From: Octopus sinensis
Taxonomy: Eukaryota
DNA length: 64,000 nt
Reading direction: 5' to 3'
NCBI RefSeq assembly: GCF_006345805.1
Contig: NC_043006.1
Coordinates: 72,726,001-72,790,000, forward strand
Position 1 is the stretch's first letter; every line of letters starts with the position of its first letter. The translations under genes and the position numbers were made by a program. Below are positions 1-44,522 of the stretch, one piece after another. The notes under the pieces were generated by a model. That model did not search any database. It saw nothing but the letters and a program-made list of their open reading frames with translations, and was not told the origin of the DNA.

Positions 1-540
1 TCACTCTCTTTATAAAATGTGTGGATGTCTTTAATTCCTGCTTCTCTCACACTCTCTCTTTCTGTCTTTAAACTTTGAAAATGTTTTTCAAAAGTGTTTT
101 TGTGACATTTTATTTTTTTTCCTGGATATTAATATCTTTATCAATCTAAATAGAACTGAACTTTAAGAAAGAGCTGAAAACATAAGCAAATCAGCAGATG
201 TTGTCATAAAACATTCTGTTTTTTATACTATTTTAACAAATGATTTTTTTTTCCTTTTGATTGTTTTTGATATCTCACTTGAATACTAACATATGCGTTC
301 ATCTGCTTTTGCACATATCAACTGCTTGCTATACATCAGTAACCTACAGTTTGGTAAATAAATAAACCTGCTGTGACTGGCAATTGACCTTAAACTGTAT
401 TCATATCCTCTAGGGATCATTTTGCTATTGGAATTAATATTCTTTTATTTATTAGTTTGATAAGAGACCAGTGACTGTCTTTGTTAGGCCGTTCCTGGGG
501 TGATGTCAGCACAGTCAACATTTAATTTTAATCATAGGCT

Positions 541-1270
541 CCGAGGTGAAGGGAAATATGAACAGAGAATGAGTTCCAAGAAGGCATAGTTCTAACGAAG
601 CTTGATTGAACATATAAGTACAGTGGCTTTTGTGTGGCCAGTCAAAGGGTGTTGAGTGGGCTTAGGTGTGGATAGTAATGCCATTCTTGTAACAATTGAA
701 GAGACAAGCATGGACTTAGCAATCAGGTACAGATAGCTTTGCCCTGGATGCCACCAAGGAGTTTTGTATGAATTGTTTACCTTTCCAAATGCATGAGACA
801 CATTTGTACTTTGTATAAAGGGTTAGACTTACTTGGTGTTAAGTAGTGTGGTGGCTCTAAAGAAGGAATCCAGCTTTTGTAGTGTTGTTTCAGTTAAGTT
901 TGATATATAGAGTCTGAACAGTTTCAAACATAGGTTTGGCATGTGTAACCATGGATTGTTCATGAGTAAAAACATTGTAGGTTTGTTTGATTGAAGCAGG
1001 GAGCATATACTAAATGTAACTTATCAAATAGTAAGATAAACAAGCTTCCCACTAAACTTCTTCAAGGCAACTTAACTCTGATGTTTGACATAGGAAAGAA
1101 TTCAAATTTTCCATTATTAAGAAGACATGGTATAAGGAAAGATGATTCTTCATTATAACCACTAATATCTTGATTGGTAACCTCTCCAAGTAACTGTTCA
1201 TCTTGGAAATGATTTGTGTTTATCTTTGAATGTCCAGAGAGCTGAGTGGAAATTGAGGCCACTCAGCTCT
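541..1270 (-). mobile_element. Degenerate CR1/L2-type LINE 3' fragment
   Basis: Minus-strand translation gives broken RT C-terminal-like motifs (LYKVQ..., SSFVRTMPSWNS, cf. SFFPRT..LWNSLP) with many stops. Boundaries are approximate. Confidence 0.45.
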
Positions 1271-3436
1271 ATAGATGTCTGTCAGCTACTTTTTTTATGT
1301 TGGTTTTTATGTACCAGGGCTCAGTATATTCAATGACAATAATACTGTGATATTTCAGCAAAGAGGAAATGTAGGGTGAAGGGAGGATTCATCATGATGG
1401 TCTATAACTCAAGTTAGTTAGAGAGGAGGTTAAGTACATAGATACTGACCGATGAAAATAGCAAATGTTTCAGCTTCTGCTCTGGAAGAGTTTGCTGTAT
1501 GTCTGTAAGCTAGTGTGGCAGAAACATTACAACACTGAATTAAATGCTTTTCCAGTATTTTATTTCATTGCATTATGTTCTGATTTGGTAAAAAAGATAG
1601 GTGAGGTACCAGTCAAGTACTGGGTTCAATTCACTTGATCCTATTCCTTCTTGACAAATTCAAGGCTTTGTGCCAAAGGTAGCATCTGTAGAGCACAGGA
1701 CTAAATATGGTAGGAATATAGTTTACATTCCTTTATGCTCTCTTAGTTTATTTAATGCCGAAATCAAACTTGCCTTTCATCCTTTGAGAGTTAATGAAAT
1801 GAGCACTGGAATGGGGTGGGTTTGGAGTTTAGTTAAGTCATATATATACTCTTGTCAACGTGTGTAACCCTTTGCTAAAGTAAGAAGTAATTATTGGTGC
1901 CATGAATTTATATCACATTGTGATCTGGTTTACATAACCAGTTAAAGACATACATGTTTAAACTGTTAAATAATACTCAGTAAAAACCTGAAATGTCACA
2001 ACCTGTTATTCCTCTTCACTAAATAAATCTGACAAAAGAAATATTTTGTTAGTGTAGAAGTTAGAGTTTAATGAATTAGTGTTTCTCTCCCCTGCCATTT
2101 ATGCTTTCCAAGCTTTGGTTTATGAAATAACAAACTTTATGTATGTTATAGAAAAAGTATTTAGCTCCATGAAATATTTAAATCAGAACATATTTGTTCC
2201 TAATCCTATCAAAAGATTATCTTCTGTTGATCATTGTTATTTGCTTTTACTGTTGTATTTGATAAACAAAAACAAAACAGAAGAAACTTTAAAGATAAAC
2301 TCTGTATGTGGGATTCTAATTATTTAAGATCAAGATTGTTAGAATGCTTAAGATCAGTTAATGCTAGAAGTTTATTAACTTTATTATTATTTAATTAGCA
2401 ATTGGTATTGCCAGTGGTTGTGTAGAAACTGTACTCCGAGAGACATCTATATTTTAGTCTTTTGTAATAAAACTAAAACAACATCTGTTTGAATGATGTT
2501 TGTTAAATCATCATTTTCTGTACCTCACAGAAAGTTTACAAAGGTTTATATCTAATTTGAAGGGTGTAAGACAGGTATGATAGATCTGAAAAGAATTTTA
2601 TTCAAAATTTGGATAACCTGTATGTTGTTACAATATTTCATTAATCAGTTGTAACCAAAGCTATTTCCCCCAGTAAAAACTGTTTATGTGCACATGTAAT
2701 ATATATTGCTTTTATATCTGTGCACATTGAAAAGGGGTTTTGTTTTATATAGCATCATTGTGGAATGGTTTTGTTATAGAATAGCTCAGTTATTTAAAAT
2801 CTCTTTCACATTTTGAGTAAACACTCAATATTTTATCTGATATTCATGGCAGTTCCTGTGATATCCAATATTTTGGCTTGCAAATCTTTTAACAAGCTAC
2901 CATCAAGTTGTGTAAGTTATTTAAGGTATACTGCAACAAAAGTTTCAGCTACAATAATTGATTTTTTTTTTTTTTTTTTTTTTTTTGTGAGGTAAGGTTA
3001 AACTAAAGAAAGAACATATCAAAATACTCATTCATTTGCAGAATAATTTTCTCTTTTAAGAAGTAATTGTTGAATAAGGGTATTATTGCTCCTACCACTG
3101 AGATACTTTAATAATTGTTTAAAGCTATATACCCTGTTCATCTTAGCTGTGTTTGTTATTTACCTAAACTTCGATATCTTACCTTTACTAGTTAACCCTT
3201 TTGATACTCACCTGAGACTGCTCCTGGCTCTAGAATACAAAATTCCTATTTTTAAAGTGATATAAATTAAAACTTCCCATCAAAATTTCATATTGATTTG
3301 TTTTGAAACACCAGTTTAATAAAGATGTTATCTTATTAAATTTTTCATTTTTTTTTTCTCAAAATAATTTTAAAGAAAAGCAATGCATTATGTATACTAT
3401 TAGTCGGACTGGTGTTTTCATCATGATTAATACTTT

Positions 3437-3482
3437 CACTCCATTCTGGCAGTTGTCCATACTCCAGCCTTTTTCAGGTGTC
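3437..3482 (-). ncRNA. Second, more decayed hammerhead-like motif (inverted copy of 3608-3649)
   Basis: Minus strand reads gacacCTGAAAAAGGCTGgagtatggacaactgccagaatggagtgaaag, alignable with gacacCTGAAGAAGGTTGgagtgcacaatgaccaaaatgtagtgaaag at 3606. Confidence 0.4.
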
Positions 3483-3607
3483 TTGTGTCAAACTTGTATC
3501 GGAATTTCAAACCTAACCCTTTATTTGATCCACAAGGATACATTGTTTTCATTCTGTTCTCTGCATTTCATGACATTTTTTTCTCTACAGTTGATTTTTT
3601 TTTTTGA

Positions 3608-3649
3608 CACCTGAAGAAGGTTGGAGTGCACAATGACCAAAATGTAGTG
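3608..3649 (+). ncRNA. Decayed minimal hammerhead ribozyme motif
   Basis: cac-CTGAAGA-aggt...gacc-AAAA-TG-TA-gtg. The departures from GAAA and from the ACGT palindrome both sit at CpG positions. Confidence 0.5.
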
Positions 3650-6496
3650 AAAGCAAGAATCAGAATGAGGACATCAATCCGACTAATGTAAATAGTGTAC
3701 ATAATATAAATTCCTCATCTCAGAAATACAGAATTGCAAAAGCTAAAAAATGTGATAACAAAAGGGTTAAATATTTAAACTCCTCATTAAATAACTAAAA
3801 ATAAAGTTAGTACACGTAATGCTTTTAATATATTTTTTCAACACATTTCCTTTATTTTTCAAATAACTAAATGCAATATTTAAGAATATATTTATTTTCT
3901 AAAAAAAAAAAGAAAATTCACTGTACTCTAGATGTTTTCTATAATCTAATCCTTTGAAACTATCACCATTTGATAAATATTTTTAGAGAGTTTCTTTTAT
4001 CTTTTAACTGTTTGATTTGTCTCTGTCTCAGATAGTTGCTGTAGTAAACATCTTTTGAGAAACTAAATCTTTTCAAGAGGATTAATTTTCCTAAATGAGT
4101 ATTTTTTACTCAGATATAAATCATAGTCCAGAAAATCTGTAATGTTCCTCTCTAAGATGCAATATTTATATTTAAATAGTAGATATGCCTGTAAGTTTCC
4201 CCTCTACATGCCACCGATGCAAGGACTGACAACAGCTTTGATACTAGTGTCATTACAAGTGTTATTTGCAGAACACATAGAAGCAGAAACAAGGCATCCT
4301 GTTCAGTGTGATGTCTTGTCAATTGCACTAATCCATTACTCTTACTCTTGACCTATACAGTATTTATCAACCCTTAAACAGTGAAAGGCAAAGTTTACCT
4401 CAGCAGAGTTTGAACTCAGAGTACATAGAGCCAGTACAAATACCATTAGACACTATACCCAGTGCTCTAATGACTGCCAATTCTCTGATTCCTGATGAGA
4501 AATAGAAGCCAATTGACTTATGTTTAGAGTCAAAGTGTGTAATAACCAAGAGAAATTCAGCGTTTGAGGTATTCAGTTAAAATTTTTCAGTTGGTAGTTA
4601 AATTCTTCCTTTTAGTATTTCACTTCAAATTTAATTCCCTATATCAATAGAGTATGTAAATCAAAACTACTTACTTATTTTGTAAGGGTTTATTAATTTT
4701 TTTTTTTAACACCTATTTAATATTTATAAAAGTTTCTTGTAAGATTAGACATCATTTTGCTTTTGAAGTGTTAGAATGTATACAGACATGACAGTAAGTA
4801 ATCCTTGCAGAATATCTCTTTCATCTTCGATATTTCTTTTGAGATTTTCTTCTTTGTAAAGCTAAAGCTTTATTAAGTTGAAATAATCAATTTTTGCTTA
4901 TATGCATTCAGTGCTTTTACAATGTTTTTCTTCTTTTTTCTTCTTAATATTTTTTTTTATTTTGCTGTATGACATATGTATATAATATATATATATATGG
5001 TTGCCATCTTTTAAACCCTGAGAAAGTTTTGTATAACATATCTTTTAAAGATTTTATATCTAAAATCCGTTGTTTGTTGGGTGATTAAATTCATATTCTT
5101 GTGCATGTATTTGTGTAACAATGCCTAACTAACTGCAGTGTTCATCAAATTTAAACTATCTCCTCCTCTCTTTCTGCATATAATATCTTGTACTAATCCA
5201 TCTTCCTCACCCTTCAGTTGTCTTTTACTCTTTTATTACACATACATTAACGTGTATGTGTGCACACGTCATTTTGATTTTACCTTAAAAACTGGTATAT
5301 GCCACTTCACCAGTCTCTTTAATATTTACTGGCTGTTAACTTATAATGTCTCATATTAGTGCAATAGTAAAAGCTAGCAGTATAGTCTGGCTATTGTAAG
5401 TAACAAGCTGGGATACTATTATATTTATCTAAGCATATAAAATATCTGTGCATGTCAAGTTTATGGTTAATGATTTAGTTAGTAAAATCTCTTGTATCAT
5501 TAAAACCTTCCTTGTAAGTCTCACACATTTCTCTTGCGCTGTCACCTCATCTTTTATTTGGTGAGTGGCTATTGTGATGTATTGATTACAAAATGTTTAC
5601 CTAAGTGTACCATCAGAATCCCTAGGCTAAAAGTAAACCATAGTTACTTCACCAGGCTGCAAGTAGAGTAGTCAGAACCTGCTTACCAGCTTCTTTCATT
5701 CCAAATTCTTATTCCAACTATTCCCCTGTCTAGTATTGAATGTCTTTGGCAATATTCTTTCTTAGATACCTGCCTCCCCTGTTTTCTTTGTTTTCTTTTA
5801 TAATTCAGTATTTTTTCTTACATTTTTTACAACCTGCTTTCATAATATTAATTTAAGACAGAAGATTCATAAATATAAAAAAAAAATTGAAGAAAAATAT
5901 TAATACAAATTGGATCAATTTTAAAGACTATTTTAAAAATAAAGTTTTGGTCGTTTTAAATTTAAAAAAAAAAGTCATCCTGATAAACAAAAATATTTAC
6001 TATGCATATTTCTGCTTTTAATACTACTGAAAACAATAATATACTATATAGCACTGTTCTTATATGGACGAAATAAAATGCTTTTGAAAAGAGAGAAAGA
6101 GAGAGAGAGAAAGATAAAAGTGATTCCAAAAGAAATATTTTAATAACAGAAAAAAATTGGCAATTATAGTAATTGGAAATATCTTATTTCTATCAATCTA
6201 TTATTAAAGTATACAAATTTTTGTAATTTTTCTTTCTGTCTTTCTTTATAACTTTTTCTTCAGTTTCAATATTTAAAATAAAACAATCCACACATTTTTC
6301 TTAATTTTATTTTAAACTATTAAAATAAATATTAAAAAAAAAATGTTTATTTTATTTTTGTTTTTGTTTTGTTATTTTTTGTTTCCTCTCTAATTCATAA
6401 GTCTACAAATCTTGTTGTATGTAAACTGAGCCGGGGCCACCAACCTAGAATCTGAACGTCTTCTTGCCGTTTCATATTTCCCTCTTCTACTGACAG

Positions 6497-6690
6497 GAAG
6501 ACACACGGTGTGGATGCATGGTGGCAGCCTTCACACGAGACACGCAGACTCACCCTCTCTGTTTATTTGCAAATTCCTCGTGGGCTCAGGCGAAGAGTGT
6601 GGCCGATGCTTTGCCTCTCAGTATCAACTGCAGAAGCATAAAAGCATTGAAAATCACCACCAAAAGAGAGGGCGGCCCAAGAAAAACTGA
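6497..6690 (+). CDS. Putative alternative terminal exon of the d4/DPF gene encoding a C2H2 zinc finger (C-x9-C-x3-F-x5-L-x2-H-x5-H) followed by an AT-hook-like KRGRPKK
   Basis: Strong acceptor (ttcatatttccctcttctactgacAG, AG at 6495-6496). Phase-1 reading gives (G)RHTVWMHGGSLHTRHADSPSLFICKFLVGSGEECGRCFASQYQLQKHKSIENHHQKRGRPKKN, ending in TGA at 6688-6690. The entry phase equals that of the PHD exon at 7096, and the segment is GC-richer than the flanking intron. Linkage to d4 is inferred. Confidence 0.6.
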
Positions 6691-7095
6691 AAATCTACTT
6701 TCCCAATGGGGGCCCAAAATGTTCATTAATGAGGCTGTTTTGAAAAGGTGCGAAGCTATTTCAAATTTTTTGTTAGTTTGGATAAGTGCTGGTGAACAAT
6801 ATCTTACCTTTATATAAACAATATGCAGATACATATTTGAATTTATCATTAAAAGCAGTTATAATTGATAATTTCTGGATGAATTTTTTTAAGCAAGGAA
6901 ATTGATAGCACAATAATTCTAAACTTATCTGTTCTGTAACTGCTTTCTTGCTTGCAGCCTGGGTGTAATGGTGGCAGGGTTAACATAGATGGGATTCTAG
7001 TTTGCCATGTTGTGTAGTGTTGTGCTTTCTTCAGTTACATCCCACTGTCTTCAAGCATTTAGTTTTTTTTATTTTTGTTTTTGTTAATCTTTCAG

Positions 7096-7221
7096 CAAAA
7101 TCTATTGATGGCAAAGTGGCTCCAAATAATTACTGTGATTTCTGCCTCGGAGACTCACAAGAGAACAAGAAGACGCGTCAGCCAGAAGGCCTAGTATCCT
7201 GCAGTGATTGTGGACGATCAG
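7096..7221 (+). CDS. d4: d4/DPF (requiem/ubi-d4, DPF1/2/3 family) exon: start of PHD1
   Basis: AG at 7094-7095 and GT at 7222-7223, phase 1 to 1. Encodes [41 protein letters not shown], matching the d4-family [11 protein letters not shown]...[11 protein letters not shown] signature. Confidence 0.95.
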
Positions 7222-8730
7222 GTAAAGGCTTTCATTCATTTAACTTTTCTTACATCCAGTATCTTAATCTTTACTTTGGGTACCATTTATATGTGTTTGT
7301 TTTTCCGTTGACAAAAAGAATTTTACAATGAACTGAAGGATTACGCAATACTTTTTATGAAATATTAATTTTTTTACAGGAAGAGTAATTACAGTGACTT
7401 TGAAGTTTTGGCCTGTTATCTTTCTACAAACTGTCAGATGAAAGACAGCAAGCCAAAACTTTGAAGTCATTGTCTTCACTCTTTGTGTAAGAGTATAATA
7501 TACTCTTGAGGAGTATATGTGTTGAGGAAACTTGTTGTTAGACTCCTTGCAGCAGTTAAGTGATTTGACAAGAAACTTTGCAATTTTAAGTTTGGTTTTA
7601 GTATCAGAGTTTTGTGTATTTGCAACAAAAATCTAAGTCCTGTTTGTTGATTATTTGGCAAAAGATATTTGGAAATATTGAAAGTCTGCCTTCTTAACAC
7701 CAGCTCCTTTTAGTCACCTCTTATGACATGCAGGGATAAGTACAGTTTATAGTTGAGTGTCATAAAACAGAACTAAAAGGGCTGGTATCAGGAAGAGTAT
7801 TTGGTTGTTAAACTGTGCCAAAACTTCCAGTCCCAACCCATGCCAGTTTGGAAGAACAGGCGTGAAAATGATGGTAGTTAAACCTATTATTTTCTTATGT
7901 TGTTTCAACATATAATTATGTGATGATATAAGCTATAATTTAGATCATACTATTACATTAATGTAATCTTGAAATACATTAATGAACATTGTTTAAAACT
8001 ATATCATGAGACAAATCTGTGAACCAAGGAAATATATATCCATGTGATGTGAAAATATTCTATATTATTAAGCTTATTTACTGGGTGATTTAATTTACTA
8101 AATATTTGAAATCTAGCTTTGACAGACTAGGACAGGAGCTGTATTTTATTGGTTTTGTTCATGCATAGGAAAAAATATTAAAAATTACTATGTTGCTTTT
8201 TAGTAAGCTAATAAACAATTTTATATACCTCTGTCTTCCTCCATAAATACAAAAACAAATACACAGCCCAACAGTTACTGAGCAAAATTGTAAAAACCCT
8301 ATAATATTTATCTCAATTACATATTTAGTACATATAAGGAAACATTTTAAGGAAGCTTGGTTTTAAATTCTGTACCAAAACAACTATTTTGGCTGCATCT
8401 TCTCTTCCATTGCTGTTATAGATCCTTCATGGTGTATCATTATAGTTTCGACATTTACAATTTTGCCCCCCATCCAAATGTTACAATTATATTTCATACT
8501 CTCTTTCTCAGAGCTCTGATACTGTTTGCAATTGTAAGTATAACAACTTGCCATTAACACTCCTCTTTAGGTTATTTATTACTCAGAATTTTTTTTTCTC
8601 TTTTTATCATTATTATTAAAAGAAAGTTTATATTTTAATTGCTTGGCTACAAATGCTCATGAAAATTACATTAATTTTCTTGCTTGAGCTTTACAATTTC
8701 TTCCAATCCATTTTGTTTGTCTTGATCCAG

Positions 8731-8843
8731 GGCATCCATCCTGCCTGCAGTTTACTCCAAACATGATTATATCCGTGAAGAAATATCCTTGGCAATGTAT
8801 CGAATGCAAGTCTTGTGGTCTCTGTGGGACATCCGATAATGAT
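8731..8843 (+). CDS. d4: d4/DPF exon: end of PHD1 and start of PHD2
   Basis: cttgatccAG acceptor and GTAAGC donor, phase 1 to 0. Encodes [38 protein letters not shown]. Confidence 0.95.
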
Positions 8844-11800
8844 GTAAGCATATGTTTGCTTTTCTTTTTTTATTTCTTTTTTTTTTATTACTTATATATA
8901 TATTTCTTTGAAAATCTATTTGCATCTTCTTAGTGCTGTTGCTACTATAGCTTCTATTGCCACTGTTTTGATTTGTTGTATGGTTAAAAAAAAAAGATTT
9001 GAGAAATTTGCATTTAAGAAAATTCACATTTCATGTCCTTAGAGGATTGTTGCTTAGATTTTTCCCCCATTAACCAGATTTAAATAAACTTAAATTAACA
9101 GAACTGTTTTTAATTACCAGTGGAAATTTCTGACTTGTGACTGAAATCGAAGGATTCAAAGTAACTCTCATTTTGTTACATTAATTTTTCATAGCATGTA
9201 TTGTTTTCCAGGTTAAACTGTTTTAAGAATTAATTTTTGTTTTGTCTTATTCTGTCAGATTTGTACAAATATATCAACACTGTTATTACTATAAGAAATG
9301 TTATGGGAATTGACCAAGAAATGATATGTATTTATTGTGAGTGTTACACCTGTTGTTTAGCCCCAAGTCATCCTTGATTGAATAGACTTCCATTTTTGTA
9401 CTTCAAGGACTCCTGCTACATTGTTCGATGTATCTGTCCTTTTTAAAGATGGTAGGGTATGATTTGACAGATTTGTGACTATGTAAGGTATTGATTCTCA
9501 ATCACAGGTAAATTTACTCGTCGGGGTAAATATTTATGTGGTAAAGGATACATATATCATACTTTATCCTATATTAGTAATCCACAAGGTTTATTAAAAA
9601 TTTATTTTGGTGAATAATGAAAACATGATAAGTTGTGATGTTTTCTGTTATATTGATTGTATTTTTGCATGGGATTAAGCTGAAGGTGGTAAATGAGAGA
9701 GGAACAGTTAAGAATCACTGCCATGGAGTTTTCCTGATTTGGCTTGTAGGAAACCTGTTTTCCAGCATCGCAGTGAGTTAGATGCTAATTATAGGGGCAA
9801 TCTAAATGATAGGACATTGGTTTGATCCTAATCTCATGAACTACAGTGTTCCATATCTGCTTTCTTGGTACCTATGAGTCACTATAAAAATCTATCTAAA
9901 GTACTAAATTTTTTGAAATGATGCAGTTTCTTTTTACTTTTAAACTTTGATTTACACCAAATTACTAAAAATATTAGCTGCTAACATCTAAAAAAAAAAC
10001 ATTCTCAAACATTTCTGTTTATCCAAATTTATGTCAAAGTATTAACAATCATGTATTATTGGATAAGGCAATGTGAGTTATCTGTGGAATGATATATTTT
10101 TAATGAGATGTAACTTATATATAACATATTGGATATGAGGATTAATGACCTGTAAAATTCTTATGGACATTAGATTATCAAATAATATTGCATATATATA
10201 TACTCAGGTGAAATAAATAGCTGATTTGTCGTGTGTGGGTGTTATAGATACCAGCTTGGAGAACATTTTGTCAGTAAAACTGTTTTGTCTTGCAGTTAGC
10301 TTTCCCATTTATTACTTGTCTCTACCATGGTCACTGTTAATTATTTTTAAATTAGTTAATAGCGATAATTTATATTTAGTAGGCATCCCTGCAGTTCTAG
10401 ATTGGTGCTTTGCAATATACACAAATGATAGAACTGTCAAGAGCACGTGTGAAGTGTAATACACACACACAAACACACACAAGCACAACAAGCATCTCCA
10501 GTTATATTCTCCTAGTCTTTTACTTTATAAAGCCACTCTGTGTTCATTCAACAGAACCCTATTTACTTCTCTCATCATAAAAGACCTGCAGTAACAGACA
10601 ATGCTTCACTAAGTGGGGTTCAGTAAGAAAGATCTTCAGAGTTGTCACCATACTGATGAAGATTAAACTCAATACTGCATTCTATATCTAATTTAATAAA
10701 TTAATTAAAAACGCATGTGTTCCCGCCTCCCCCCCAAGAAATAGCCATTTAGAAAATTATAGTTCTCACCTGTAAGGATATAATTTCAATTAATTAAGAT
10801 TTCTGGGTTTTCCACATCAAGTATGCTAGTGTCCACTAAAAACTAGATTTAGGTGGTTAATGGCAAGAGCTGGCATTGTTTATTTTGTTTTGAACTTAGC
10901 TTTCATGTCAGATACAACACCTGATAAAGTGTGACCTTGTATTCTTGCAGACCAATCTGTTTTTGATGTAATCAGGTTTGCAACAGCATGGATCAAGAAA
11001 CTGCAGGATATTTGCTGTAGGTATTGTAAAACTGAGAACAACTGTGACCATGGGTAGCACATTTTAACACATCTAGCACTGACCCACAACTCCAGCTAAT
11101 TACCGGCAAGCTTTTGTGACCCACCAAATTCGCTTTACTTCAATCTAAATCTAATCTTAACAACTGCACTTATTATTAATACATGCATTATCTTTTTTCA
11201 GAGACTGTTTATATCTAGACTTAGTTATCATCTTCATTAGTGTTTACCAATTCTTTAGCTATCAATTTAGCCTTTCACTATTTACACCTATCACTATTTC
11301 ACCAATCACTAACATGCTGGTTACTGGTTGTTACTATTAGCCACACTACATCAAACTTCATATTTAGAGCTTTGTTAGCTTCAAAATTTCATTTACTATA
11401 TTCAGATTAATATTTTCTCAGTTTTTGTTGTTAAATATTTTCTCCATTAGAAATGTCCAAAGTTGTCTTGCAGAGTAGAAATTCAAAAATATTTTCTGAT
11501 ATATATATATATATATATCTGTTCCTATTTCCTGAAAATATGTACAGTTCTCTGCAAACTTTAAGATCTTTTCTGACTAGCAGTGAATTATAGGATAAAG
11601 ACATATAAACAAGTTGATATTGAATAAAATAGTTTCCTAATTCATAAATAAAAATAAATAATATTACTTTGTCATGAAATAAGCCACAATGGATGTGAAA
11701 TTAAACTGCTGAATTATAATAGCTTTACAGCACATGCTGAAATAAGAAAAGAATCTGAGCATATTTGTAAATTCTGAATAAATATTGGCTTCTATTGTAT

Positions 11801-12947
11801 ACCAGCAGTATTATAGAAGATTTTAGTTGAATTGATTTTAATGAGATGTAAGGAACAAGGGTGGTATTGCTGTTTTCTGTTAGGTTGGTTTTGTCAATAA
11901 GGCTACTCTAGCATCTGGTTTAATCAAAGTATTACCAAGTAGTATCTTTTAGAAAATTCTTTATAGAAAACTTATGTCAAAATAGGTGCATGTGTGGCTA
12001 TATGGTTGAAAAGCTTGTTTCCTAGCCATGTGGTCTCAGGGTTCTGTTCCACAGTGCGGCACTTTGGGCACGTGTCTTTTACTATTGTCTGTGGTTGACC
12101 AAAGCCTTGCATGTGGAGTTAATAGGCAGAGGCTGATAGGGGTCCGTTGTGTGTTTTTGTGTTTACCCTTGTCTAGACATCACATGATGGTTGTAAATGA
12201 GCATCATTGTCTTGCAAGCGAGGTTGTTCATTTCCCGTCTTCCACGAAAAACACGTCTAGTTACTGGAAAATATTGCCTTTCTTGGAAATAGATGTGGGT
12301 TATCAACAGAAAGAGCATTTGACCATAGAAAATCTACCTCAACAAATTCTTTCTGACCCATACAAACAATGAAAAGTGGACATTATTAAATGGATGATGT
12401 ATGTTAACTCAAAAATAATTTCTTTCCTTGCAAATGAATTTTTTTCTGCAGTGGGCAAAAGCTCAGACTAATGGCAAAGTTAGTCATTTTCACATTATGT
12501 TGAAGTTGGTTTCTAATGACATACGAGATACAGTGAAGCCCATATTTTTCTAGTCCCCAAATTAAATAGCTGTACTGTTTCAGTTTATTTTATTATTAGA
12601 TTTATTAAACAACAAAAAAGATGAGGACAAATATCCGTCAAATGTAAATAATAAACAAAAAGAATTGCTTGTTATGAAGGAAATTTGAAGTGTTCTTATT
12701 CACATTGAGCAATATTATAACATGAACCAAATAGCCAAATCATTTCATCATTTATGTGTAAAATCTTTTGATAAGCCTGTAATCTGTAAATAGCTCTATT
12801 ATAAATATGTTTAATTATTTTCTAATTAGTTGTCATTTAAATGAATTATATGTTCTTTGGCTTTCTAAGTTTCATTCCATTATTTTCCCAAATTTTTGTT
12901 TTGCATTGTTTCATGTGGAGACTTTTACTATTTCATACGCACACACA

Positions 12948-13790
12948 CAAGGTGGTTTCAAAAAGTCTCCAAACTAGTCCTGTAGCATGCCAACAGATGG
13001 CAGCACACACTTGTATGTGCACTGAAAGCTAGCAGTGACCTTCATGAGGCAGTGTGACCAGTGATGTCATTGGGTTTACTTCACAAATATGTGTTTTTGT
13101 GATCACATGTATGCTGTAGTCTGCAATTTTTTTCATGGATAGGAACAAAGAGCCAACATGAAATTTTGTATTAAACTTGGGAAGTCTGCTACAGAGACAT
13201 TGAACATGCTTCAGTAAGCTTATGGAAATGAGGCATTGGATTGTACACAATGTTTCAAGAGGCCTGGGTGCTTCAAAAGTAGAAGAATGTCCCTAGAAGA
13301 CCTGCCATGAGTGTCACCCCCAGAAATTTGGTTTTGTGCATCGAGAATTTGTCCCCCAGAGCTAGACCACCAATTGAGAGTTGTACTGCGATGTTTTTAA
13401 GTGTTTAATGAAGGACATCCAGTGAAAGCGACTGGATCTGTGGACTACAAAGAATTGGATTTTTCACAACAACAATGCATCCTGTCACCAAGCTCGTCTT
13501 ACTTGTGAGTTTCTTGCCAAAAACAACATGGTATCACTTCTGCACCTGCCCTATTTACCAAATTTAGCATCTGCAGGCTTCCATCTTTTCTTCAAGATGA
13601 AAATGCAACTCAAAGGTACTGTTTTAACACCGTTGTCGAGATCCAGAGTGAATCACAGAAGGTCCTTGACCTACTTACAGGAAAACAACGTCCAGGCCGG
13701 ATTCCAAAAGTGGCAGGAACACTGGGACTGGTGTAAAAAGTTATTTTTTATTATGCATAACTACTCCTGGAACCTTTTGATACCACCTTG
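12948..13790 (+). mobile_element. Internally deleted mariner element in a d4 intron
   Basis: Imperfect TIRs (caaggtggtttcaaaaagt / accttttgataccaccttg). Broken transposase: EQRANMKFCIKLGKSATETLNML, then EFVP, WIFHNNNASCH, HLPYLPNLAS, KMKMQLKG. Confidence 0.75.
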
Positions 13791-13872
13791 TGTGTGTGTG
13801 TGTGTGTATATGTATGTATGTTACGTATATATATATAAAATTAATTTTCCTTTCTTTTCTTTCTCCTATTAG

Positions 13873-13954
13873 GAACAGCTTCTGTTCTGTGATGACTGTG
13901 ACCGAGGCTATCATATGTATTGCTTGACTCCTCAGTTATCGGAACCACCTGAGG
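13873..13954 (+). CDS. d4: d4/DPF exon: PHD2 core
   Basis: ttctcctattAG acceptor and GTAATA donor, phase 0 to 1. Encodes [27 protein letters not shown]. Confidence 0.95.
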
Positions 13955-14083
13955 GTAATATAACTATATACATATATGCATTATGTACTGAAACACATTG
14001 CCTATTTGCACTTACTTCCTCAGAAAAAAATTGTCCTTCCAAAATATTCTTCCTGTTAGTCACTGACTTTGATACTAACACAG

Positions 14084-14372
14084 AACATTTATTCATGTTA
14101 ACTAAGATTCATTTTATAATGTTAAGTGGAGTAGACAAGAGTAAAGAACGTACTTTCAGATTCACATAATGAAGTTTTAAGCATCTCACATGTATGTATG
14201 TAGCATCTCGCATGTATGTATGTGAGATACATACATGTATCTCACATGTATGTAAGTAACATTTATTCATGTTAACTAAGATTCATTTTATAATGTTAAG
14301 TGGAGTAGACGAGAGTAAAGAACTCACTTTCAGATTTATATAATGAAGTTTTAAGCATTTCACATGTATGTA
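14084..14372. repeat. Local direct duplication of about 115 bp (14084-14198 and 14258-14372)
   Basis: Two nearly identical copies of aacatttattcatgttaactaag...cacatgtatgta, separated by short catgtatgta repeats. Confidence 0.85.
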
Positions 14373-14846
14373 GGCAGATACACACATGCATAACTTTTAA
14401 AAAACAAAAATTACCATTTCATTATTGAATTTTAAGTAGTGCTTATTTTAGATAATCTGTAATAAGATACTTAAAATTGTGTGTGTGTACTTATATCATC
14501 CTCATCACTTAGCATAGGTTGGAAGGTTTAACTAGAGCTAGCAAGCTGGAGAGCTGTATCATGTTCCAGCCTGATTTGACTTGGTTTCTATGGCTGGATG
14601 CCCTTCCTAATACTTATCACTTTACATAGTATACTGGGTGATTTTAATGTGGCACTAGCACCTGTGTTATTATGTGGCACCAGCACAGATGCTACTTACG
14701 TGGCACTGGCATGGGTGCTTTTACATGGCACCAACATGGATGCTTTTTCTCTCTTTGTTTTCATTGAAAACTATCATGTGTATTGTATTTTGATTATCAA
14801 ATAAGTTCTATATTCTGATCTTTCTTACATTTATCTTTCGTTACAG

Positions 14847-14914
14847 GTAGTTGGAGTTGCCACTTGTGCATAGAGGAATTCCACGGAGGTAAAAAGCCCG
14901 AGGGCATGCAATGA
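14847..14914 (+). CDS. d4: d4/DPF last coding exon
   Basis: tctttcgttacAG acceptor, phase 1. Encodes GSWSCHLCIEEFHGGKKPEGMQ with TGA at 14912-14914, completing PHD2. All four exon phases join in frame. Confidence 0.93.
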
Positions 14915-17900
14915 TGATGTGGATGCCAAGCAGTGCTGTGCATCGGACCATTTGTGTTCCTTCTCACCTGTTGACCAGTGCGTGGAGGAGGAGGCATGCT
15001 ACATTCATTACTTTTGCTGTCTTTGTCTGGAGTTCACCTCTCCTAGATTACCGGGAAGAGCGATGTATCTAGCAGACTCAACTGCTGCAGCTGCTGCCTT
15101 AACTCATTTGAATTTTTTTTCAGTAGTTATTAGGAAAAACTTTTGAATTCTTTCCTGTAACCAAAAACCTTAACATATTTTTGTATATGTAAAACAAAAA
15201 TTTCAAAATATCAAACAAAAAAAAAAAAGACAACAACAGTGTCCCAATTGAGGTAGGGCTAAATTTTATTCCAACAGTTACCTACATTTTTTTCCCCCCG
15301 TTAAATGTAATATGTATGCTGCTAATGGTAATTATCTTACTGATATACTTCAAAATAATCATAATGAGTATAAGAATCTCAACAACAACAACAACACAAA
15401 CAACAAAAAAAAACTTCTGCTAATGTTGCCTAAAGAAAAAAAATCTGATACAGCACTATTGTAGACAATTGATTCCTGTAGTAGTAACAGTAGTAAATAT
15501 CAAAGTCAATAGCATGCACATGCCCACATGGTTCTTCTGAAACTGATAGTAGTACAGCACTATAAGACTTGAAGAGGAGAAGCTGTGCTTGCCTACACAA
15601 GCAAACATGTGCAATGATATTTTGGATATAACTTTAACAATAGTCGTATTTTGTTTGCATTGGCTGCTAGTATCATTTAGTAGTTGTGTTGGCTACTTGA
15701 GGGGGTGACTGTGTGCGTGTGTGTGTGCACAAGCAGTAGATACCATTTAGCCAGTTAGACTTCTTGAATATATTGTCTTCATTATATTTATATCATGGTT
15801 TTCATTTTTTTTTTATCATTTAATGCAACTGTTATCTTTGGACAATATTTTAAAATTTAATTACCATAAAGAATTTAGTAAAGACTAGTTTAAGAAGTAT
15901 TATGTGTAAATCTAAAGAACTTTGAATTGGACATTTTACTTCCTTCAAAAGAATTTTGTTCTGATTAGATGTAATAATTTAAACATTTTATTGAAATAAG
16001 CTTCGGTCTTTAAATATTTGAGTTTGAAATGTGTTTAGTGAGAATATTATACATTAGCCTTCTCTCTTCTCATTTCTGTCCCCTTTCTTGTCTGTCTCAG
16101 TCAAAAGTACCGCTTCTTGCTTAATAGTTTAATGATGTCCAATTAGGTGCTGGCTGCTATAAAAGTAAAATGAAGACGACAAAGGCAACAGTGCAGATAT
16201 ATTAGGTTGCTGCGAAGCATATGTACTGTTGTGCCTTACCAGTTATTGAATTGGCCTGTGACTGCCAGCGACACGCTATATGGAATAACCAGTTTTAGAT
16301 TATTTTTGTTACCCTTTACATTTGTTATATTGAGCTATAAATATGGAATTATATTTAAAGTTGAATAGATAAATTTCACTTAGTATGGACAAAGATTACT
16401 ATTTGGAAATTAGTTTTTACACAAGTGAGACAAACAAGGATGAGATTATTTTTCTAAAAATAAAAACCAAGAAAAATATTTAAAATTTATTGGATAAAGC
16501 ATTTCTTTTTTTTTTTTTTTTACCTTTAAATATAAATCTATGCAAGACTTTAATGTTTCAAAACTCACAATTTGTTTTTGAAAGTCTCTTATTATTATTA
16601 AGTCAAACAGACTTTCTTAGATTGAAATAAGTTTAAAGTTAATAGAGCTGTTAGTAAAACTTATTGTACCAGTTTTGACTCTGAGCATTTAACGAGATAT
16701 TTAAATATATATAGAGGGAGAGACACATCTATATTATTTCATATCTGAGATTTCAACCTGTCTTTAGTCTCCTGCATTAATTCCATCTTTCTGAATGGAA
16801 TTTTAAGTAGAATTATCAATATTTTCTTTTCTTATTGATATTTTCTTTCAAGTTAAACAAATGTTGTATATGTGTGTGCATGTGTGTGGTTTATCTACCT
16901 CTTATCAGAATATACAGAACTCAGTTTAAAAGAATGATGTAAAACAATTTTTAAAATGTTCATCAAAATTTTAATTTAAATAATAGTAATAATCATTATC
17001 ATCATAATAATAATAATAATGTGGTCATAGAAATTTTTTTTTCATATGTTCATATTTATTGAATTTAACATTATTCTTAAATGTTTATTTAAATTTTGGC
17101 TTTGATGCTCTTTGCATGCCATATTACTCCTTTTCACATCTTTAAAATCAAGCAGCTCGTTTTGGATTAATTCAGTGTTGTAGGTTTCCTTTATAAGTAT
17201 CTACCTCTCAGTTTTAAAAAGCTGGTTTGAAGCCATTATCTGTATTAAAATTAATTCCTGCTGATATCAAAACAATGTCATTCTTTCTACATAAATATTA
17301 GGAGTCTTGGGAGAAGACTTGGTTACATCAACCATTTGGTAAAGATACACTTTAGCTTATGAAAAAACATATAATGGTATAAATTCAGCTGAAGAAAGCC
17401 ATTATTGGCATGTTTATGTATTTGTTACTCACCACTAGTCCCCTGTTTATAGATTGGTACTAACAGGGTCGGTGCTATGCACTTGGAAAACCAAGAGATT
17501 ACTTAAGATGTTAAAATCTAAATTCTGAACTGTTTGGATGTAATTTCTTAATCTAGCTAAAAGTACAGATTTTTTTCAAAGAACATAAAGAAAACAAAAA
17601 AAAAAGAGAGAGAGAGATTATGATAACTTTTTTTTGGTAAATCCTAGTCTTACTATTCATATCTGTCAACAGATATGGATGCTGTAGTTGTTTAAACAAT
17701 GTTTTAGCAGTATCAGAAATAAAATAATCTTCAGCTGAACAATTGTATGTATGCTACATATTTATAAGCTACTACTCTTGGCTGTATTGGCCAAACAGCT
17801 GCACTTCGTAGCACTGGCCTGGGGCACCGAATACTCTAACTCCGGCTCTGTGTTTCATGCTAAACATTCTTTAAATGTATCAGTATCTGGTATTGTTTTC

Positions 17901-18250
17901 AATTTGAAATAAATCAAATTCTTTTTCTTTTTATCTCAGACCCCCCACCCCCTAATCCACACTTATATCTTTCTGTTAAACTGAGTTCTTCTTTTTTAAA
18001 ATTCTAAATTTTCCCCTCACACTTGCCTATTGGTGCTATTTTCCTCAACAGTTACACACTCACATATAAGACACTGAATCATGACAGTTACCTTCAAAAG
18101 CTAAAGTTTTGTTGCTTTTTTTCCTATGTAAAGGTTTTTTTCCCATTCCAATCTGACACACTTCAGACTTGTAAAAGAACAAACAAAAGAAATAAAATTT
18201 TCTCTAGCTCTAACATTTGGTTTCCTTTTCTCTTTCAATAACTGTTGATC
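14915..18250 (+). other. Probable long 3' UTR of d4
   Basis: About 3 kb after the stop has no recognisable SINE/LINE copies, unlike the rest of the window, and several AATAAA hexamers (e.g. near 16460, 17720, 17910, 18190). The true 3' end cannot be fixed from sequence. Confidence 0.45.
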
Positions 18251-20212
18251 AAATCTGCTTTAACATTTTTGCTACATGTTTATCTCTCATGTTTTAATTG
18301 TTTCAGTCATTGGACCGAGGCCCTGTTGGGGCACTCTCTTGAAGAATTTTAGTCAAACAAATCAACCCCAGTATTTTTTAAAAGTCTGGTACTTACTCTT
18401 CTCTTTTGCTAAACCACTAAGTGACAGGGACATAAACAAACCAACACCAGTTGTCAAGTGGTGTGAGGGGATAAACACCGACACAAAAAGACACATACGC
18501 ACGATAGGCTTCCACACAATTTATGCCTACAAAATTCATTCATAGGGGTGTTGGTCAACCTGGGGCTATAGTAGAAGGTACTCACCCAAGGTGTTACACA
18601 TTGGCACTGAACCCAAAACAACATGGTGACAAAGCAAGTTTCTTTGCCACATAGTCATAACCTACACCTATATATATGTGTAATTTTTATAATTTAATGC
18701 CATAATTGTTAAAATGGAATTTATCTTGGTTTCTTACTTTGCCATTTTTCAAGCTGTGTTTCATCAGGTTAAAAAATGGTAAAATTAATATTTCAACCAG
18801 GAAACCCTGGGTTGCTGTATTTCACAAGACTTCTAGTTTTCATAGGTGATCAAGTGGTATTCTTACTTGTTGAAACCCAACCACATAGTAAAAAATCTTA
18901 TATAGAGTTATCCAAGGTTATGCACCAACAAAGCCAAAGCCTTGTGGACATCTTTGAAAGAGATCACACTTTTACTTGTTTCAGTCATTGGATTGTAGCC
19001 ATCTTGAAGAGTTTGGTTGAACAAATTGACCTTGGTACCTTTTTTTTTTTTTAATAATTATAATTTTACTAGTCACTTTTGCTGAACTGCTAGGTTATGG
19101 GGACAGGAACAAACCAACATTTGTCAAGTGTTGGAGAACAAACACAAAGACAAACATATATACAGTTTTGGCTCAGGGTTCCACATTGGGACTGAATCCA
19201 AATGTAAAGTGAGCTTTTTAACCACACGGCTATGCCTACACTGTGAAGTCACGTGGCTAAGTAGTTAGGGAATTCAGCTCATGATTGCAAGGTTGTGAGT
19301 TTGATTCTTGGTGGCAGTGCATTGTGTCCTAGAGTAAGGCACTTTATTTCATGTTGCTTCAGTCCATTCAGCTGGCAAAAATGGGTTGTGTCTGTATTTC
19401 AAAAGGGCAGCCAAGTCACATTCAGTATCACGCTGAATCTCCTTGAGAACTACATTAATTTGCGAGGTAAGTGTTACAAACAATGGAGATTAACCTGGGT
19501 GCATCATCTATGAATTATTTGTTTAGAAAGAAGTCAATCAGAATGGCTGGCAACATTAACATTTTTGCTACCATAATGTTATTTCTTTTACACCTGTTAA
19601 TTAAATTTACCTGCTCAAAAAAGTCAAATTTAATAAGAAAGATCAACTAAAATTACATAACTATAAACCACTGGTACATAAGCACCCACTGACAAAATTT
19701 CAAATCTATGTAAAAAATTTAAAGTTACAAGCAAATATTGTGGACACCCCTTTTGAACCTAAATATTTCAAAATAATGTGAACACATAAGCATTACATTT
19801 TACAGATTAATCTGAACACTAAAGGGTTAAACTTGCCTTCTGTTTTCTCAAGTGTAACTTATTGAGACTATGGTTATTATCCAACCATTTCATTCACGGT
19901 CTACCTTCCCAGTTGGCTCATCTTGAATAGATGAAACTTTAAATGTCCTTGAATTGGAAGCCAGTCAATTGCAAATAACTTTTCCTATGGGAGTTTCTGA
20001 ACTCTTTCCTATGAACCATCACAATCTCATTTCAATACTTGACATAGTGAATTATACTACTTGTAGTACCTACTTAGAACCAGGTGGACTCTGCTGTTGA
20101 GAGCTAAGTTATCTTCTATGGATACAAACAGCTTACTCCTTGACTGTATGTAAACTACTCTGTTAACTCACTTAAATGTGGTTCTTCAGTGAAGTACGTA
20201 AAATTAATGGTT

Positions 20213-32090: not shown

Positions 32091-32886
32091 ATGTGAAGCT
32101 GGTGTAGGATACGCGGTGAACTCACTTTATTTGTTGGGTTTTTGCAGTCACAGCATATCTCCAGAGGTCTCAGTCTTTCATCATTGCCTCTGTGAGGCCC
32201 AACGTTCGAAGGTCATGCTTGACCACCTCATCCCATGTCTTCCTGGGTCTACCTCTACCCCGGATTCCTTCAACTGTTTTATATCCATTTATTTACATTT
32301 TATTTTTCACTTGCTTTGCAGGCATTGGACTGCGATCATGCTGGAGCACCACCTTGAAGGGTTTAGTTGAAAAAAATCAACTCCAGTACCTATTTTAAAA
32401 TCTGGAACTTAGTCTACCAGATGCTTTTGCCAAACCACTAAGTTATAGGGACAAAAACAAACCAACACTGGTTAGCAAGTGTTGGTGGGGACAAATGCAA
32501 AAAACACAAACACAAGGATACATTTATATATATGTATATATGATAGTCTGCCACAATTTCTGTCTACTATATTTACTCACAAGGCAATGGTCAGTCCAGA
32601 GCTATAGAAAATACTTGCCCAAGATGCAATGTAGTGGGACTGAACCCACTACCATGTGGTTACAAAGTTACTTTGGTTATCACACAGCAATTTATTTTTT
32701 CCAAATTATACTATCTATTTTGGAACAATAAATTCATTGGTTGTAGGTTTCTAAAGGGCCAATTATTGCTTCATTAATTTTCCACTAGTAATTATGACAA
32801 GTGAATGTCTGCACAACTCTGGCAGAACAGATAGCACAAAGTATTCATTTTTGTTCAAAACACACGAACACATACACACACACATG

Positions 32887-44489: not shown

Positions 44490-44522
44490 AGTTCGTAAAC
44501 ATTCTCATTTTTTTTCAACACG

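What the first reader, a model, noticed from the sequence alone, without database searches (positions are those of the whole stretch)
6497..6690. Hidden alternative last exon would swap the d4 double-PHD reader for a C2H2 finger plus AT-hook
Seen: 600 bp upstream of the first PHD exon lies a strong acceptor with the same phase (1). It opens a frame with all canonical C2H2 anchor residues (C..C-x3-F-x5-L-x2-H-x5-H, with an unusually long 9-residue Cys spacer), then KRGRPKK and a stop. Established: d4/DPF proteins are BAF subunits whose double PHD reads acylated histone H3, PHD-less forms exist (vertebrate DPF3a, Drosophila Toothrin), and RGRP is the AT-hook core. Inference: alternative last-exon choice could switch this subunit from a histone-mark reader to an AT-rich-DNA/zinc-finger binder. 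It could instead be a poison exon or an exonised transposase tail.
Basis: partly seen in the sequence, partly recalled or inferred. Interest (0 to 1): 0.8.

Follow-up and report, generated by a model that had tools for sequence, protein, structure and literature searches.

The report
Transposase tail relic in d4 intron
The proposed "hidden exon" is real sequence, but it is the broken-off tail of a jumping-gene (transposase) protein lodged in an intron of the d4/DPF gene. Its zinc finger, basic tail and stop codon come from the transposon, and nothing here shows that the d4 gene splices to it.

Summary
This covers the AG at 6495-6496, the phase-1 63-codon frame at 6499-6687, the C-x9-C-x3-F-x5-L-x2-H-x5-H pattern, KRGRPKK, the stop at 6688-6690, and the position 599 bp upstream of the first PHD exon.

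The origin is different from the one proposed. The peptide matches the extreme C-terminus of a family of 550-855-aa DDE transposases related to ISAzo13/TP36-Zator (Pfam PF07592). Those proteins end in two C2H2 fingers plus a basic tail, for example ...YQLQKHQTEKNHKLGRGRPKKK* in a sponge protein and ...YQLQKHKEIQGHHQPQGRPKKN* on a metagenome contig.

The homology runs on upstream through the proposed acceptor in another frame. There CRFIFPSSTDRK corresponds to CRYVFTSEADRK of finger 1. A TGA stands where finger 1's first Cys should be, and a frameshift lies at about 6498-6503. The pyrimidine tract and AG are therefore former codons.

No other transposase remnant or terminal repeat is present, so this is a roughly 340-bp, 5'-truncated relic. 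The tail is absent upstream of the first PHD exon in a gastropod d4 locus and from an insect d4 locus.

Splicing cannot be tested with these tools. The acceptor-like site is strong, so low-level exonisation is not excluded. Interest is low.

The parts
6420..6760 (+). GC-rich patch, interpreted as a 5'-truncated relic of a DNA-transposon transposase gene (its 3' coding end plus about 70 nt of trailer). The boundaries are approximate.
   Evidence: GC is 0.478, against 0.194 upstream (5800-6419) and 0.25 downstream (6761-6940). Homology to transposase C-termini starts at about 6429 and ends at the stop at 6690. No other copy or transposase piece is in the window.
6429..6500 (+). Remnant of transposase zinc finger 1, in the frame of 6432: SRGHQPRI*TSSCRFIFPSSTDRK.
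   Evidence: tblastn with P0149 aligns SLGKTPSQCTSGCMYVFLSEADRKRHN to this stretch. A profile of transposase tails hits SSCRFIFPSSTDRKTHG at profile positions 84-100, collinear with and just upstream of the tail hit. Alignment A2 shows the same.
6453..6455 (+). In-frame TGA at the position of the first Cys of finger 1 (a disabling lesion).
   Evidence: In alignment A2 this column is Cys in five relatives.
6495..6496 (+). AG of the acceptor-like site. It is the first two bases of the former Arg codon AGG in D-R-K.
   Evidence: By my own crude weight matrix it ranks 2nd of 1095 AG sites on the + strand in 1-20000.
6498..6504 (+). Frameshift (-2 or +1 nt) between the finger 1 core (...TDRK) and its His pair (H-TVWM-H).
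   Evidence: Relatives read ...SEADRKRH-x4-H in one frame. In the window, D-R-K is in the frame of 6432 and R-H-TVWM-H is in the frame of 6499.
6499..6687 (+). It holds the His pair of finger 1 (6502-6519), a spacer, long-spacer C2H2 finger 2 (6568-6657) and the basic tail KRGRPKK (6664-6684).
   Evidence: The whole-library HMMER search gave P0125 at 49% identity, aligned to its last residue. tblastn gave P0125 at 9.6e-13, P0136 at 1.1e-9 and P0148 at 8.3e-6. The profile hit was E 7.2e-12, aligned end to end with the profile's C-terminus.
6688..6690 (+). TGA stop, at the same position as the natural stop of the transposase family.
   Evidence: The window ends GRPKKN*. P0125 ends GRPKKN*, P0148 ends GRPKKK*, L007 ends GRPKAN* and P0146 ends GRKKKT*.
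6848..6853 (+). ATTAAA hexamer proposed as a poly(A) signal. It is not informative here.
   Evidence: There are 120 AATAAA/ATTAAA hexamers on the + strand of the window, about one per 530 nt.
7096..7221 (+). d4/DPF exon encoding the first half of PHD1 (phase-1 acceptor). This is context, not part of the relic.
8731..8843 (+). d4/DPF exon (PHD1 end and PHD2 start).
13873..13954 (+). d4/DPF exon (PHD2).
14847..14914 (+). Last d4/DPF coding exon (SWSCHLCIEEFHGGKKPEGMQ*).

Best explanation
Positions about 6420-6760 are a decayed, 5'-truncated fragment of a cut-and-paste DNA transposon. Its transposase belongs to a eukaryotic family related to bacterial ISAzo13/TP36 and to the Zator superfamily.

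Intact members of that family are 550-855 aa long. After the DDE catalytic core they carry a Cys-rich 'KCTDxxCxHC' stretch. Most then carry a short C2H2 finger (C-x2-3-C-RYVF-x-SEAD-x2-RH-x4-H), a variable spacer, a second C2H2 finger (...YQLQKHK...H) and a basic end (G-R-P-K-K-x-stop).

The window keeps only the last ~87 codons of that gene, in the same orientation as the d4 gene. The first finger is dead: TGA replaces its first Cys, and a frameshift lies before its His pair. The second finger, the basic tail and the original stop codon still read through.

- Shown: the T/C-rich run and AG that look like a strong phase-1 acceptor are the old codons for F-I-F-P-S-S-T-D-R.
- Shown: the 'AT-hook' is the transposase's own basic tail.
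- Inferred: in the transposase that tail helps DNA binding or nuclear import.
- Inferred: the fragment plays no designed part in the d4 protein, and any splicing into it would be incidental.
For: 1. Homologues of the tail. A search of 1.84 billion representative proteins with the 63-aa peptide gave two short single-stretch homologues, P0125 and P0136. The remaining hits were generic multi-finger proteins.

2. Link to a transposase.
- On its 208-kb contig, P0125 is the end of a longer open frame. It follows transposase-like ORFs that carry frameshifts, among other mobile-element genes (RVT_1, pogo DDE_1).
- A pseudo-protein joined from those ORFs retrieved intact proteins P0146, P0147, P0148 and P0149, at E 1e-100 to 6e-52.
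- P0146 and P0148 end with the same two fingers and basic tail.
- P0147 passes Pfam's cut-off for DDE_Tnp_ISAZ013 (28.5 against 26.9 bits). P0149 and P0148 hit it below cut-off.
- P0148 and P0147 align over 551 residues at E 3e-87, right up to finger 1.
- ISAzo13/TP36 is the bacterial relative of Zator (PMC10045372; PMC7386202).

3. The window against the family.
- A profile built only from the transposase tails hits the window's frame at E 7.2e-12, aligned to the very end of the profile.
- It also hits the neighbouring frame just upstream, with SSCRFIFPSSTDRKTHG on the finger 1 motif.
- tblastn shows the same with P0149, P0148 and P0125.
- Alignment A2 puts the TGA on the finger 1 Cys column.

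4. Other contexts.
- None of the other loci that carry the tail (L001-L003, L007) has d4 exons.
- L007 is another solitary decayed tail.
- The d4 locus of the gastropod Gigantopelta aegis, with 14.8 kb upstream of its first PHD exon, lacks the tail. So does a compact insect d4 gene.

5. Composition. The patch is a sharp GC island (0.48 against 0.19) that starts about 75 nt before the 'acceptor'.
Against: - The acceptor-like site is strong. By my own crude matrix it ranks 2nd of 1095 AG sites and equals the best true acceptor of the gene.
- It is in the sense orientation and in the phase needed to follow the upstream d4 exon.
- The 63 codons after it have no stop or detectable frameshift, while the ~25 codons before it carry two lesions. 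This is also what selection on an exonised tail would produce. The contrast is weak evidence, because the other two frames are open here too and the ORF was noticed because it is open.
- Copy number in the host genome, terminal inverted repeats and target-site duplication could not be checked. No TIR pair was found.
- The upstream finger 1 match alone is weak: E 0.043 in the window-wide search and 0.23 by tblastn. It is convincing only because it is collinear with and adjacent to the strong hit.
- The taxon of the window was not established. One survey found Zator-type elements among molluscs mostly in bivalves (PMC10294476).
Confidence: 0.8

Rival explanations
1. Exapted transposon tail. The relic is of transposon origin but now serves as a genuine alternative last exon. 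It would give a PHD-less d4 isoform that ends in a transposase-derived C2H2 finger and basic/AT-hook tail. This would be a host-transposase fusion made by alternative splicing.
For: The acceptor-like site is strong, in sense orientation and in matching phase 1. Finger 2's ligands and the tail are intact, and the frame is open from the AG to the natural stop, whereas the part before the AG is broken. Capture of transposase DNA-binding domains by alternative splicing is a documented route to new genes in vertebrates (bioRxiv 10.1101/2020.05.07.082677).
Against: There is no transcript or protein evidence. No protein in the searched collections carries this tail attached to d4, although the tools may miss isoforms. 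The tail is absent from the gastropod and insect d4 loci examined. All three frames are open in this patch, so the open frame is not a sign of selection. ATTAAA is too common here to count. Only a 63-codon stump is retained, with half a dead finger at its start.
Confidence: 0.07
2. Incidental or poison exon. The relic is sometimes spliced in because of its accidental acceptor, either as a terminal exon or as a cassette using a GT at 6748-6749. This would give a truncated, probably unstable or NMD-targeted transcript without a selected function.
For: The acceptor is strong. A possible donor AAG|GTGCGA lies at 6747/6748. The in-frame stop at 6688-6690 lies upstream of three further exon junctions.
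Against: There are no expression data. The donor is mediocre, and nothing distinguishes this site from other intronic pseudo-exons.
Confidence: 0.12
3. Chance open frame or a native, non-transposon d4 exon. On this reading the finger-like pattern and RGRP arose in place.
For: All three frames are open in this GC-rich patch. Pfam finger matches are below threshold.
Against: The finger pattern is expected 0.03 times and KRGRPK 0.005 times per window. There is specific, end-anchored homology to transposase C-termini, including the shared stop position.
Confidence: 0.01

Closest known systems
Zator superfamily / ISAzo13 (TP36) DDE transposases (Pfam PF07592, DDE_Tnp_ISAZ013)
   Same: The window's peptide is homologous and collinear with the last ~87 residues of eukaryotic proteins, down to the stop codon. 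The catalytic region of those proteins matches PF07592: P0147 above cut-off, P0149 and P0148 below.
   Different: The window holds only the C-terminal stump. It has no DDE core, no terminal inverted repeats and no target-site duplication. Assignment of the relatives to 'Zator' as curated in Repbase was not tested. It rests on the Pfam match and on the published ISAzo13-Zator link.
PHD-less d4 forms (vertebrate DPF3a; Drosophila Toothrin)
   Same: If the site were spliced, the product would be a d4 protein without the double PHD, as in these forms.
   Different: Those forms are native gene products. This tail is a transposon fragment with no sign of conservation at d4 loci and no transcript evidence.
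Host-transposase fusion genes made by alternative splicing to an intronic transposon (e.g. CSB-PGBD3, SETMAR; Cosby et al., bioRxiv 10.1101/2020.05.07.082677)
   Same: The geometry is the same: a transposon in sense orientation inside an intron, an acceptor in front of a transposase-derived open frame that ends at the transposase's own stop, and a DNA-binding-type motif.
   Different: Known fusions keep a whole folded transposase domain and are conserved and expressed. Here there is a 63-codon remnant with one finger, and neither expression nor conservation is shown.
Long-spacer C2H2 zinc fingers (C-x8-10-C-G-K-x-F...)
   Same: Finger 2 has the C-x9-C spacing with the G-x2-C-G motif. Many eukaryotic multi-finger proteins found by the search have it too, for example P0123, P0131, P0134 and P0141. 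The 'unusual' spacer is therefore a normal variant.
   Different: Pfam scores are below the gathering cut-offs. Zinc binding was not tested.

Membership tests
ISAzo13/TP36-Zator-like DDE transposase (as a relic of its gene) | Sequence homology, collinear, to the family's proteins | tested here: met
   The profile of transposase tails hit the window at E 7.2e-12, anchored at the C-terminus, with a collinear upstream hit in a second frame. tblastn gave P0125 at 9.6e-13 and P0148 at 8.3e-6. Alignment A2 agrees.
ISAzo13/TP36-Zator-like DDE transposase (as a relic of its gene) | The relatives carry the DDE catalytic domain of this family | tested here: met
   P0147 scores 28.5 bits for PF07592 against a cut-off of 26.9. 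P0149 scores 21 bits and P0148 14.9 bits, both below cut-off. P0148 and P0147 align over 551 aa at E 3e-87.
ISAzo13/TP36-Zator-like DDE transposase (as a relic of its gene) | DDE catalytic core present in the window's copy | tested here: not met
   tblastn with five family proteins finds nothing but the tail. The copy is a 5'-truncated fragment, not an element.
ISAzo13/TP36-Zator-like DDE transposase (as a relic of its gene) | Terminal inverted repeats and 3-bp target-site duplication | tested here: inconclusive
   No inverted-repeat pair has an arm near 6690-6800. This is expected if the 5' end is lost. The 3-bp TSD criterion is from PMC10045372.
ISAzo13/TP36-Zator-like DDE transposase (as a relic of its gene) | Multiple copies in the host genome | not testable with these tools
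   The host genome is not available. There is only one copy in the 64-kb window. Decayed copies do exist in other organisms' DNA (L001, L002/L003, L007).
Alternative last exon of d4/DPF (PHD-less isoform) | Spliced transcripts joining the upstream d4 exon to 6497, with 3' ends after 6690 | not testable with these tools
   No transcript data could be reached. Exact-product look-ups for three ORFs of the patch found nothing.
Alternative last exon of d4/DPF (PHD-less isoform) | Conserved at the orthologous intron position in other species | tested here: not met
   There is no match in 14.8 kb upstream of the first PHD exon of Gigantopelta aegis, nor in an insect d4 locus. Close relatives of the window's species could not be examined.
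Alternative last exon of d4/DPF (PHD-less isoform) | Coding signal begins at the acceptor | tested here: not met
   Homology to the transposase continues about 70 nt upstream of the AG in another frame. The GC island starts at about 6420.
Alternative last exon of d4/DPF (PHD-less isoform) | Acceptor of adequate strength, in the phase of the upstream donor | tested here: met
   Phase 1 matches exon 7096. The crude weight-matrix score is 9.8, against 4.6 to 9.6 for the four true acceptors. The matrix is my own approximation.
C2H2 zinc finger (Pfam zf-C2H2) | C-x(n)-C-x3-F-x5-L-x2-H-x3-5-H ligand pattern and a profile match | tested here: inconclusive
   The pattern is present. Pfam gives 19.7 bits against a cut-off of 25.2, and zf-C2H2_11 gives 20.8 against 27. 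The homologous finger of P0148 scores 22.9 bits.
AT-hook | R-G-R-P core flanked by basic residues | tested here: inconclusive
   K-RGRP-KK is present and rare by chance. There is no Pfam AT_hook hit. In relatives the tail varies (GRGRPKKK, QGRPKKN, KRGRPKAN, AGRKKKT, RPAKRKR), so what is conserved is a basic tail rather than a strict AT-hook.

The most novel reading that the evidence does not exclude
A chromatin-remodeller subunit (d4/DPF, BAF complex) has captured the C-terminal zinc finger and basic tail of a Zator/ISAzo13-like transposase as an alternative last exon. This would give an invertebrate PHD-less isoform that trades histone-acyl reading for a transposon-derived DNA-binding module. 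It would be a host-transposase fusion outside vertebrates and from a superfamily not known for domestication.
Probability: 0.07. Interest if true: 0.55.

Novelty: new member of a known kind. Interest (0 to 1): 0.17.

Why it matters
As it stands, this is an ordinary intronic transposon fragment. Its main value is as a caution: a decayed coding relic can imitate a perfect 'hidden exon', with a strong acceptor, the right phase, a domain-like frame and a stop.

Two side results have modest value. This ISAzo13/Zator-like transposase family ends in a conserved pair of C2H2 fingers and a basic tail. Solitary tails of it survive in several animal genomes.

If RNA data showed that the site is spliced, it would become an example of transposase capture by a BAF subunit.

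Tried and rejected
- Word-indexed protein search with the 63-aa peptide found nothing. This turned out to be a limit of the index, because P0125 shares YQLQKHK and GRPKKN with the query but was only found by the exhaustive search.
- The PHD-domain search returned only proteins under 190 aa and no close relative of the window's species. It therefore could not reveal annotated isoforms or the taxon.
- Exact-product look-ups for three ORFs of the patch found nothing on record.
- Self-comparison of the window found no second copy at the DNA or protein level.
- No inverted repeat flanks the patch.
- DNA-level similarity to the homologous loci is negligible. Only a 74-nt, 68% match lies over the tail.
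- The first attempt at a metagenome locus search failed because the alignment was too diverse. The second found one more decayed tail.
- I considered that RGRP might mark a LINE ORF2 C-terminus (from memory). I rejected this because the spacing and motifs do not fit, and the transposase homology explains the whole stretch.
- I considered using 'two lesions upstream, none downstream of the AG' as evidence of selection. A rough calculation gives p of about 0.03-0.05. I set it aside because of ascertainment bias and because all three frames are open here.
- Pfam gave no support for my impression that 13426-13869 is a mariner-type relic.

Full report
**1.

- The sequence reads ...tttcatatttccctcttctactgacAG|GAAGAC..., with the AG at 6495-6496.
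- The frame starting at 6499 gives RHTVWMHGGSLHTRHADSPSLFICKFLVGSGEECGRCFASQYQLQKHKSIENHHQKRGRPKKN, followed by TGA at 6688-6690.
- An exon starting at 6497 would contribute two bases to a split codon, which is phase 1. The first PHD exon does the same (AG at 7094-7095, start 7096).
- The d4/DPF identity of the neighbourhood is solid. The joined exons 7096-7221, 8731-8843, 13873-13954 and 14847-14914 encode a double PHD. It is 76-91% identical to d4 proteins of gastropods, spiders, insects and vertebrates.
- No upstream d4 exon lies in 1-6400.
- The finger pattern and KRGRPK are far rarer than chance would give: 0.03 and 0.005 expected per window in six frames.
- By a crude weight matrix of my own, the acceptor-like site ranks second of 1095 AG sites on this strand in the first 20 kb. 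That equals the best true acceptor of the gene.

**2. What weakens the exon reading from the sequence alone**

- The stretch sits in a sharp GC island: 0.48 over about 6420-6760, against 0.19 before and 0.25 after.
- The island begins about 75 nt upstream of the AG.
- In this island all three forward frames are open, at 86, 61 and 107 codons. The open frame is therefore not informative.
- AATAAA/ATTAAA occur 120 times on this strand of the window, so the ATTAAA at 6848 means little.
- Pfam finger matches are below threshold.

**3. Where the peptide comes from**

- The word-indexed search found nothing.
- The exhaustive HMMER search of 1.84 billion representative proteins gave two short, single-stretch homologues besides generic multi-finger proteins.
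  - P0125 (67 aa) ends ...YRCQFVLDGKPCGKSFHMMYQLQKHKEIQGHHQPQGRPKKN.
  - P0136 (69 aa) reads ...VVCKFVTESGVVCGKKFATQYYLNKHKSEEEH....
- On its 208-kb contig (L001), P0125 is the end of a 166-codon open frame. That frame follows two transposase-like ORFs interrupted by frameshifts, among reverse-transcriptase and pogo-type genes.
- A pseudo-protein joined from those ORFs retrieved intact proteins of 546-855 aa at E 1e-100 to 6e-52.
  - P0148, from the sponge Dysidea avara, ends ...CMRCRYVFTSEADKERHTRLIHSG...IKCPVCGEIYPTRYQLQKHQTEKNHKLGRGRPKKK.
  - P0146 ends ...CDICERYVFQSEADRVRHLQRIHS...ICTFSGCGLVFTTHHQLQKHKRENGHKCKAGRKKKT.
- P0147 passes Pfam's cut-off for DDE_Tnp_ISAZ013. P0149 and P0148 hit it below cut-off.
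- P0148 and P0147 align over 551 residues (E 3e-87), up to and including finger 1.
- ISAzo13/TP36 is the bacterial counterpart of the eukaryotic Zator superfamily (PMC10045372; PMC7386202).
- The window's finger, basic tail and stop codon are therefore the standard C-terminus of a DDE transposase family.

**4. The homology crosses the 'acceptor'**

- tblastn with P0149 aligns SLGKTPSQCTSGCMYVFLSEADRKRHN to 6429-6509, which reads SRGHQPRI*TSSCRFIFPSSTDRKTHG in the frame of 6432.
It also hits SSCRFIFPSSTDRKTHG in the other frame, at the collinear finger 1 positions immediately upstream.
  - That second hit is weak window-wide (E 0.043).
  - It falls in the ~100 nt where collinearity predicts it.
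- In alignment A2 the TGA at 6453-6455 sits in the column of finger 1's first Cys. CRFIFPSSTDRK-x-H-TVWM-H lines up with CRYVFTSEADKERH-TRLI-H.
- D-R-K is read in one frame (6492-6500) and R-H-T-V-W-M-H in the other (6499-6519). A -2 or +1 nt frameshift therefore lies at about 6498-6503.
- The AG is the start of the old Arg codon AGG.
- The pyrimidine tract and AG are thus the remains of codons for F-I-F-P-S-S-T-D-R.

**5. Extent and context**

- No other part of the transposase is detectable in the window.
- There is no second copy and no flanking inverted repeat. The element is a roughly 340-bp 3' stump.
- The other loci that carry the tail (L001-L003, L007) contain no d4 exons. L007 is another solitary decayed tail...STRYQLLQHQEKDGHKLKRGRPKAN*.
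- Conversely, two d4 loci contain no trace of the tail. These are the locus of the gastropod Gigantopelta aegis, with 14.8 kb upstream of its first PHD exon, and a compact insect d4 gene.
- The 'unusually long' Cys spacer is a normal variant. Many eukaryotic fingers found by the search have C-x8-9-C-G-K-x-F.
- The RGRP core is not constant among relatives. What is conserved is a basic tail.

**6. Interpretation**

- Best supported: this is a decayed transposase-gene fragment, inserted in sense orientation in a d4 intron, that mimics a terminal exon.
- Shown: the homology, its collinearity across the AG, the lesions and the shared stop.
- Inferred: the fragment has no designed role in d4, and the basic tail served the transposase in DNA binding or nuclear import.
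- Not excluded: occasional or even functional splicing into the site. The site is strong, in phase and in the sense orientation, and transposase capture by alternative splicing is a known route to new genes (bioRxiv 10.1101/2020.05.07.082677).
- The frame after the AG is intact while the part before it is broken. This would fit selection. However, the sample is tiny, the finding was selected for being open, and all three frames are open here.

**7. Limits**

- No transcript data and no genome of the source species or its close relatives were reachable.
- The taxon of the window was not established.
- Assignment to 'Zator' rests on the Pfam match of the relatives and on published statements, not on a comparison with curated consensus sequences.
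- One mollusc survey found Zator mainly in bivalves (PMC10294476). Either the host or the exact superfamily label may therefore need revision.

**8. Verdict**

The finding is ordinary: a relic of a known kind of element. The residual chance that it is a real captured exon is about 7%.

Noticed in passing
window 44500-48000 (+): This stretch has 55% GC, against 30-40% elsewhere. Consecutive + strand ORFs hit Pfam DUF7047, RVT_3 (RNase H-like) and the rve integrase core, so it looks like an LTR-retrotransposon-type element. Only domain names were looked up; the sequence was neither printed nor assembled.
   Followed up: partly
window 13426-13869 (+): A 148-codon open frame in the d4 intron ends 4 nt before PHD exon 13873. 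Its motif ...NNASCHQARLT...LLHLPYLPNLASAGFHLFFKMK..LKG looks, from memory, like the C-terminus of a mariner-type transposase. If so, it is a second sense-oriented transposase relic in this gene. Pfam gave no hit.
   Followed up: partly
window ~62020-62058 (+) and ~32236-32292 (-): Two further RGRP motifs (EDGTCRRGRPKKT and RGRGRPRKT) lie in repeat-like open frames. They are unrelated to the d4 intron relic beyond the motif.
   Followed up: no
window 7096-14914 (+): All three introns between the four d4 exons in the window are phase 1, and so is the intron that ends at 7095. Exon 14847-14914 ends the protein with SWSCHLCIEEFHGGKKPEGMQ*.
   Followed up: yes
L001 10535-11539 and 12416-12982 (+): Downstream of the decayed transposase on the metagenome contig lie two related ORFs with no Pfam hit. 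They share motifs such as RPGD..HP.F..G...FFDVSVRN.L.PSY and LGHWSPSSLE.LK.IA. They are probably parts of another, unclassified mobile element.
   Followed up: no
P0146-P0149 and L001 9652-10201: This ISAzo13/Zator-like transposase family has a conserved C-terminal module after the DDE core: 'F-L-K-C-T-D-x2-C-x-H-C', then a 'HY-x-TFL' motif. Most members then add two C2H2 fingers and a basic tail. P0149 stops after finger 1, and P0147 has a degenerate finger 1 and no finger 2. I do not know whether this module has been described.
   Followed up: partly
tool behaviour: The word-indexed protein search missed P0125, although P0125 shares a 7-mer and a 6-mer with the query. For a 107-aa query it listed only proteins shorter than 190 aa. 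Its negative results therefore say little about longer isoforms.
   Followed up: partly
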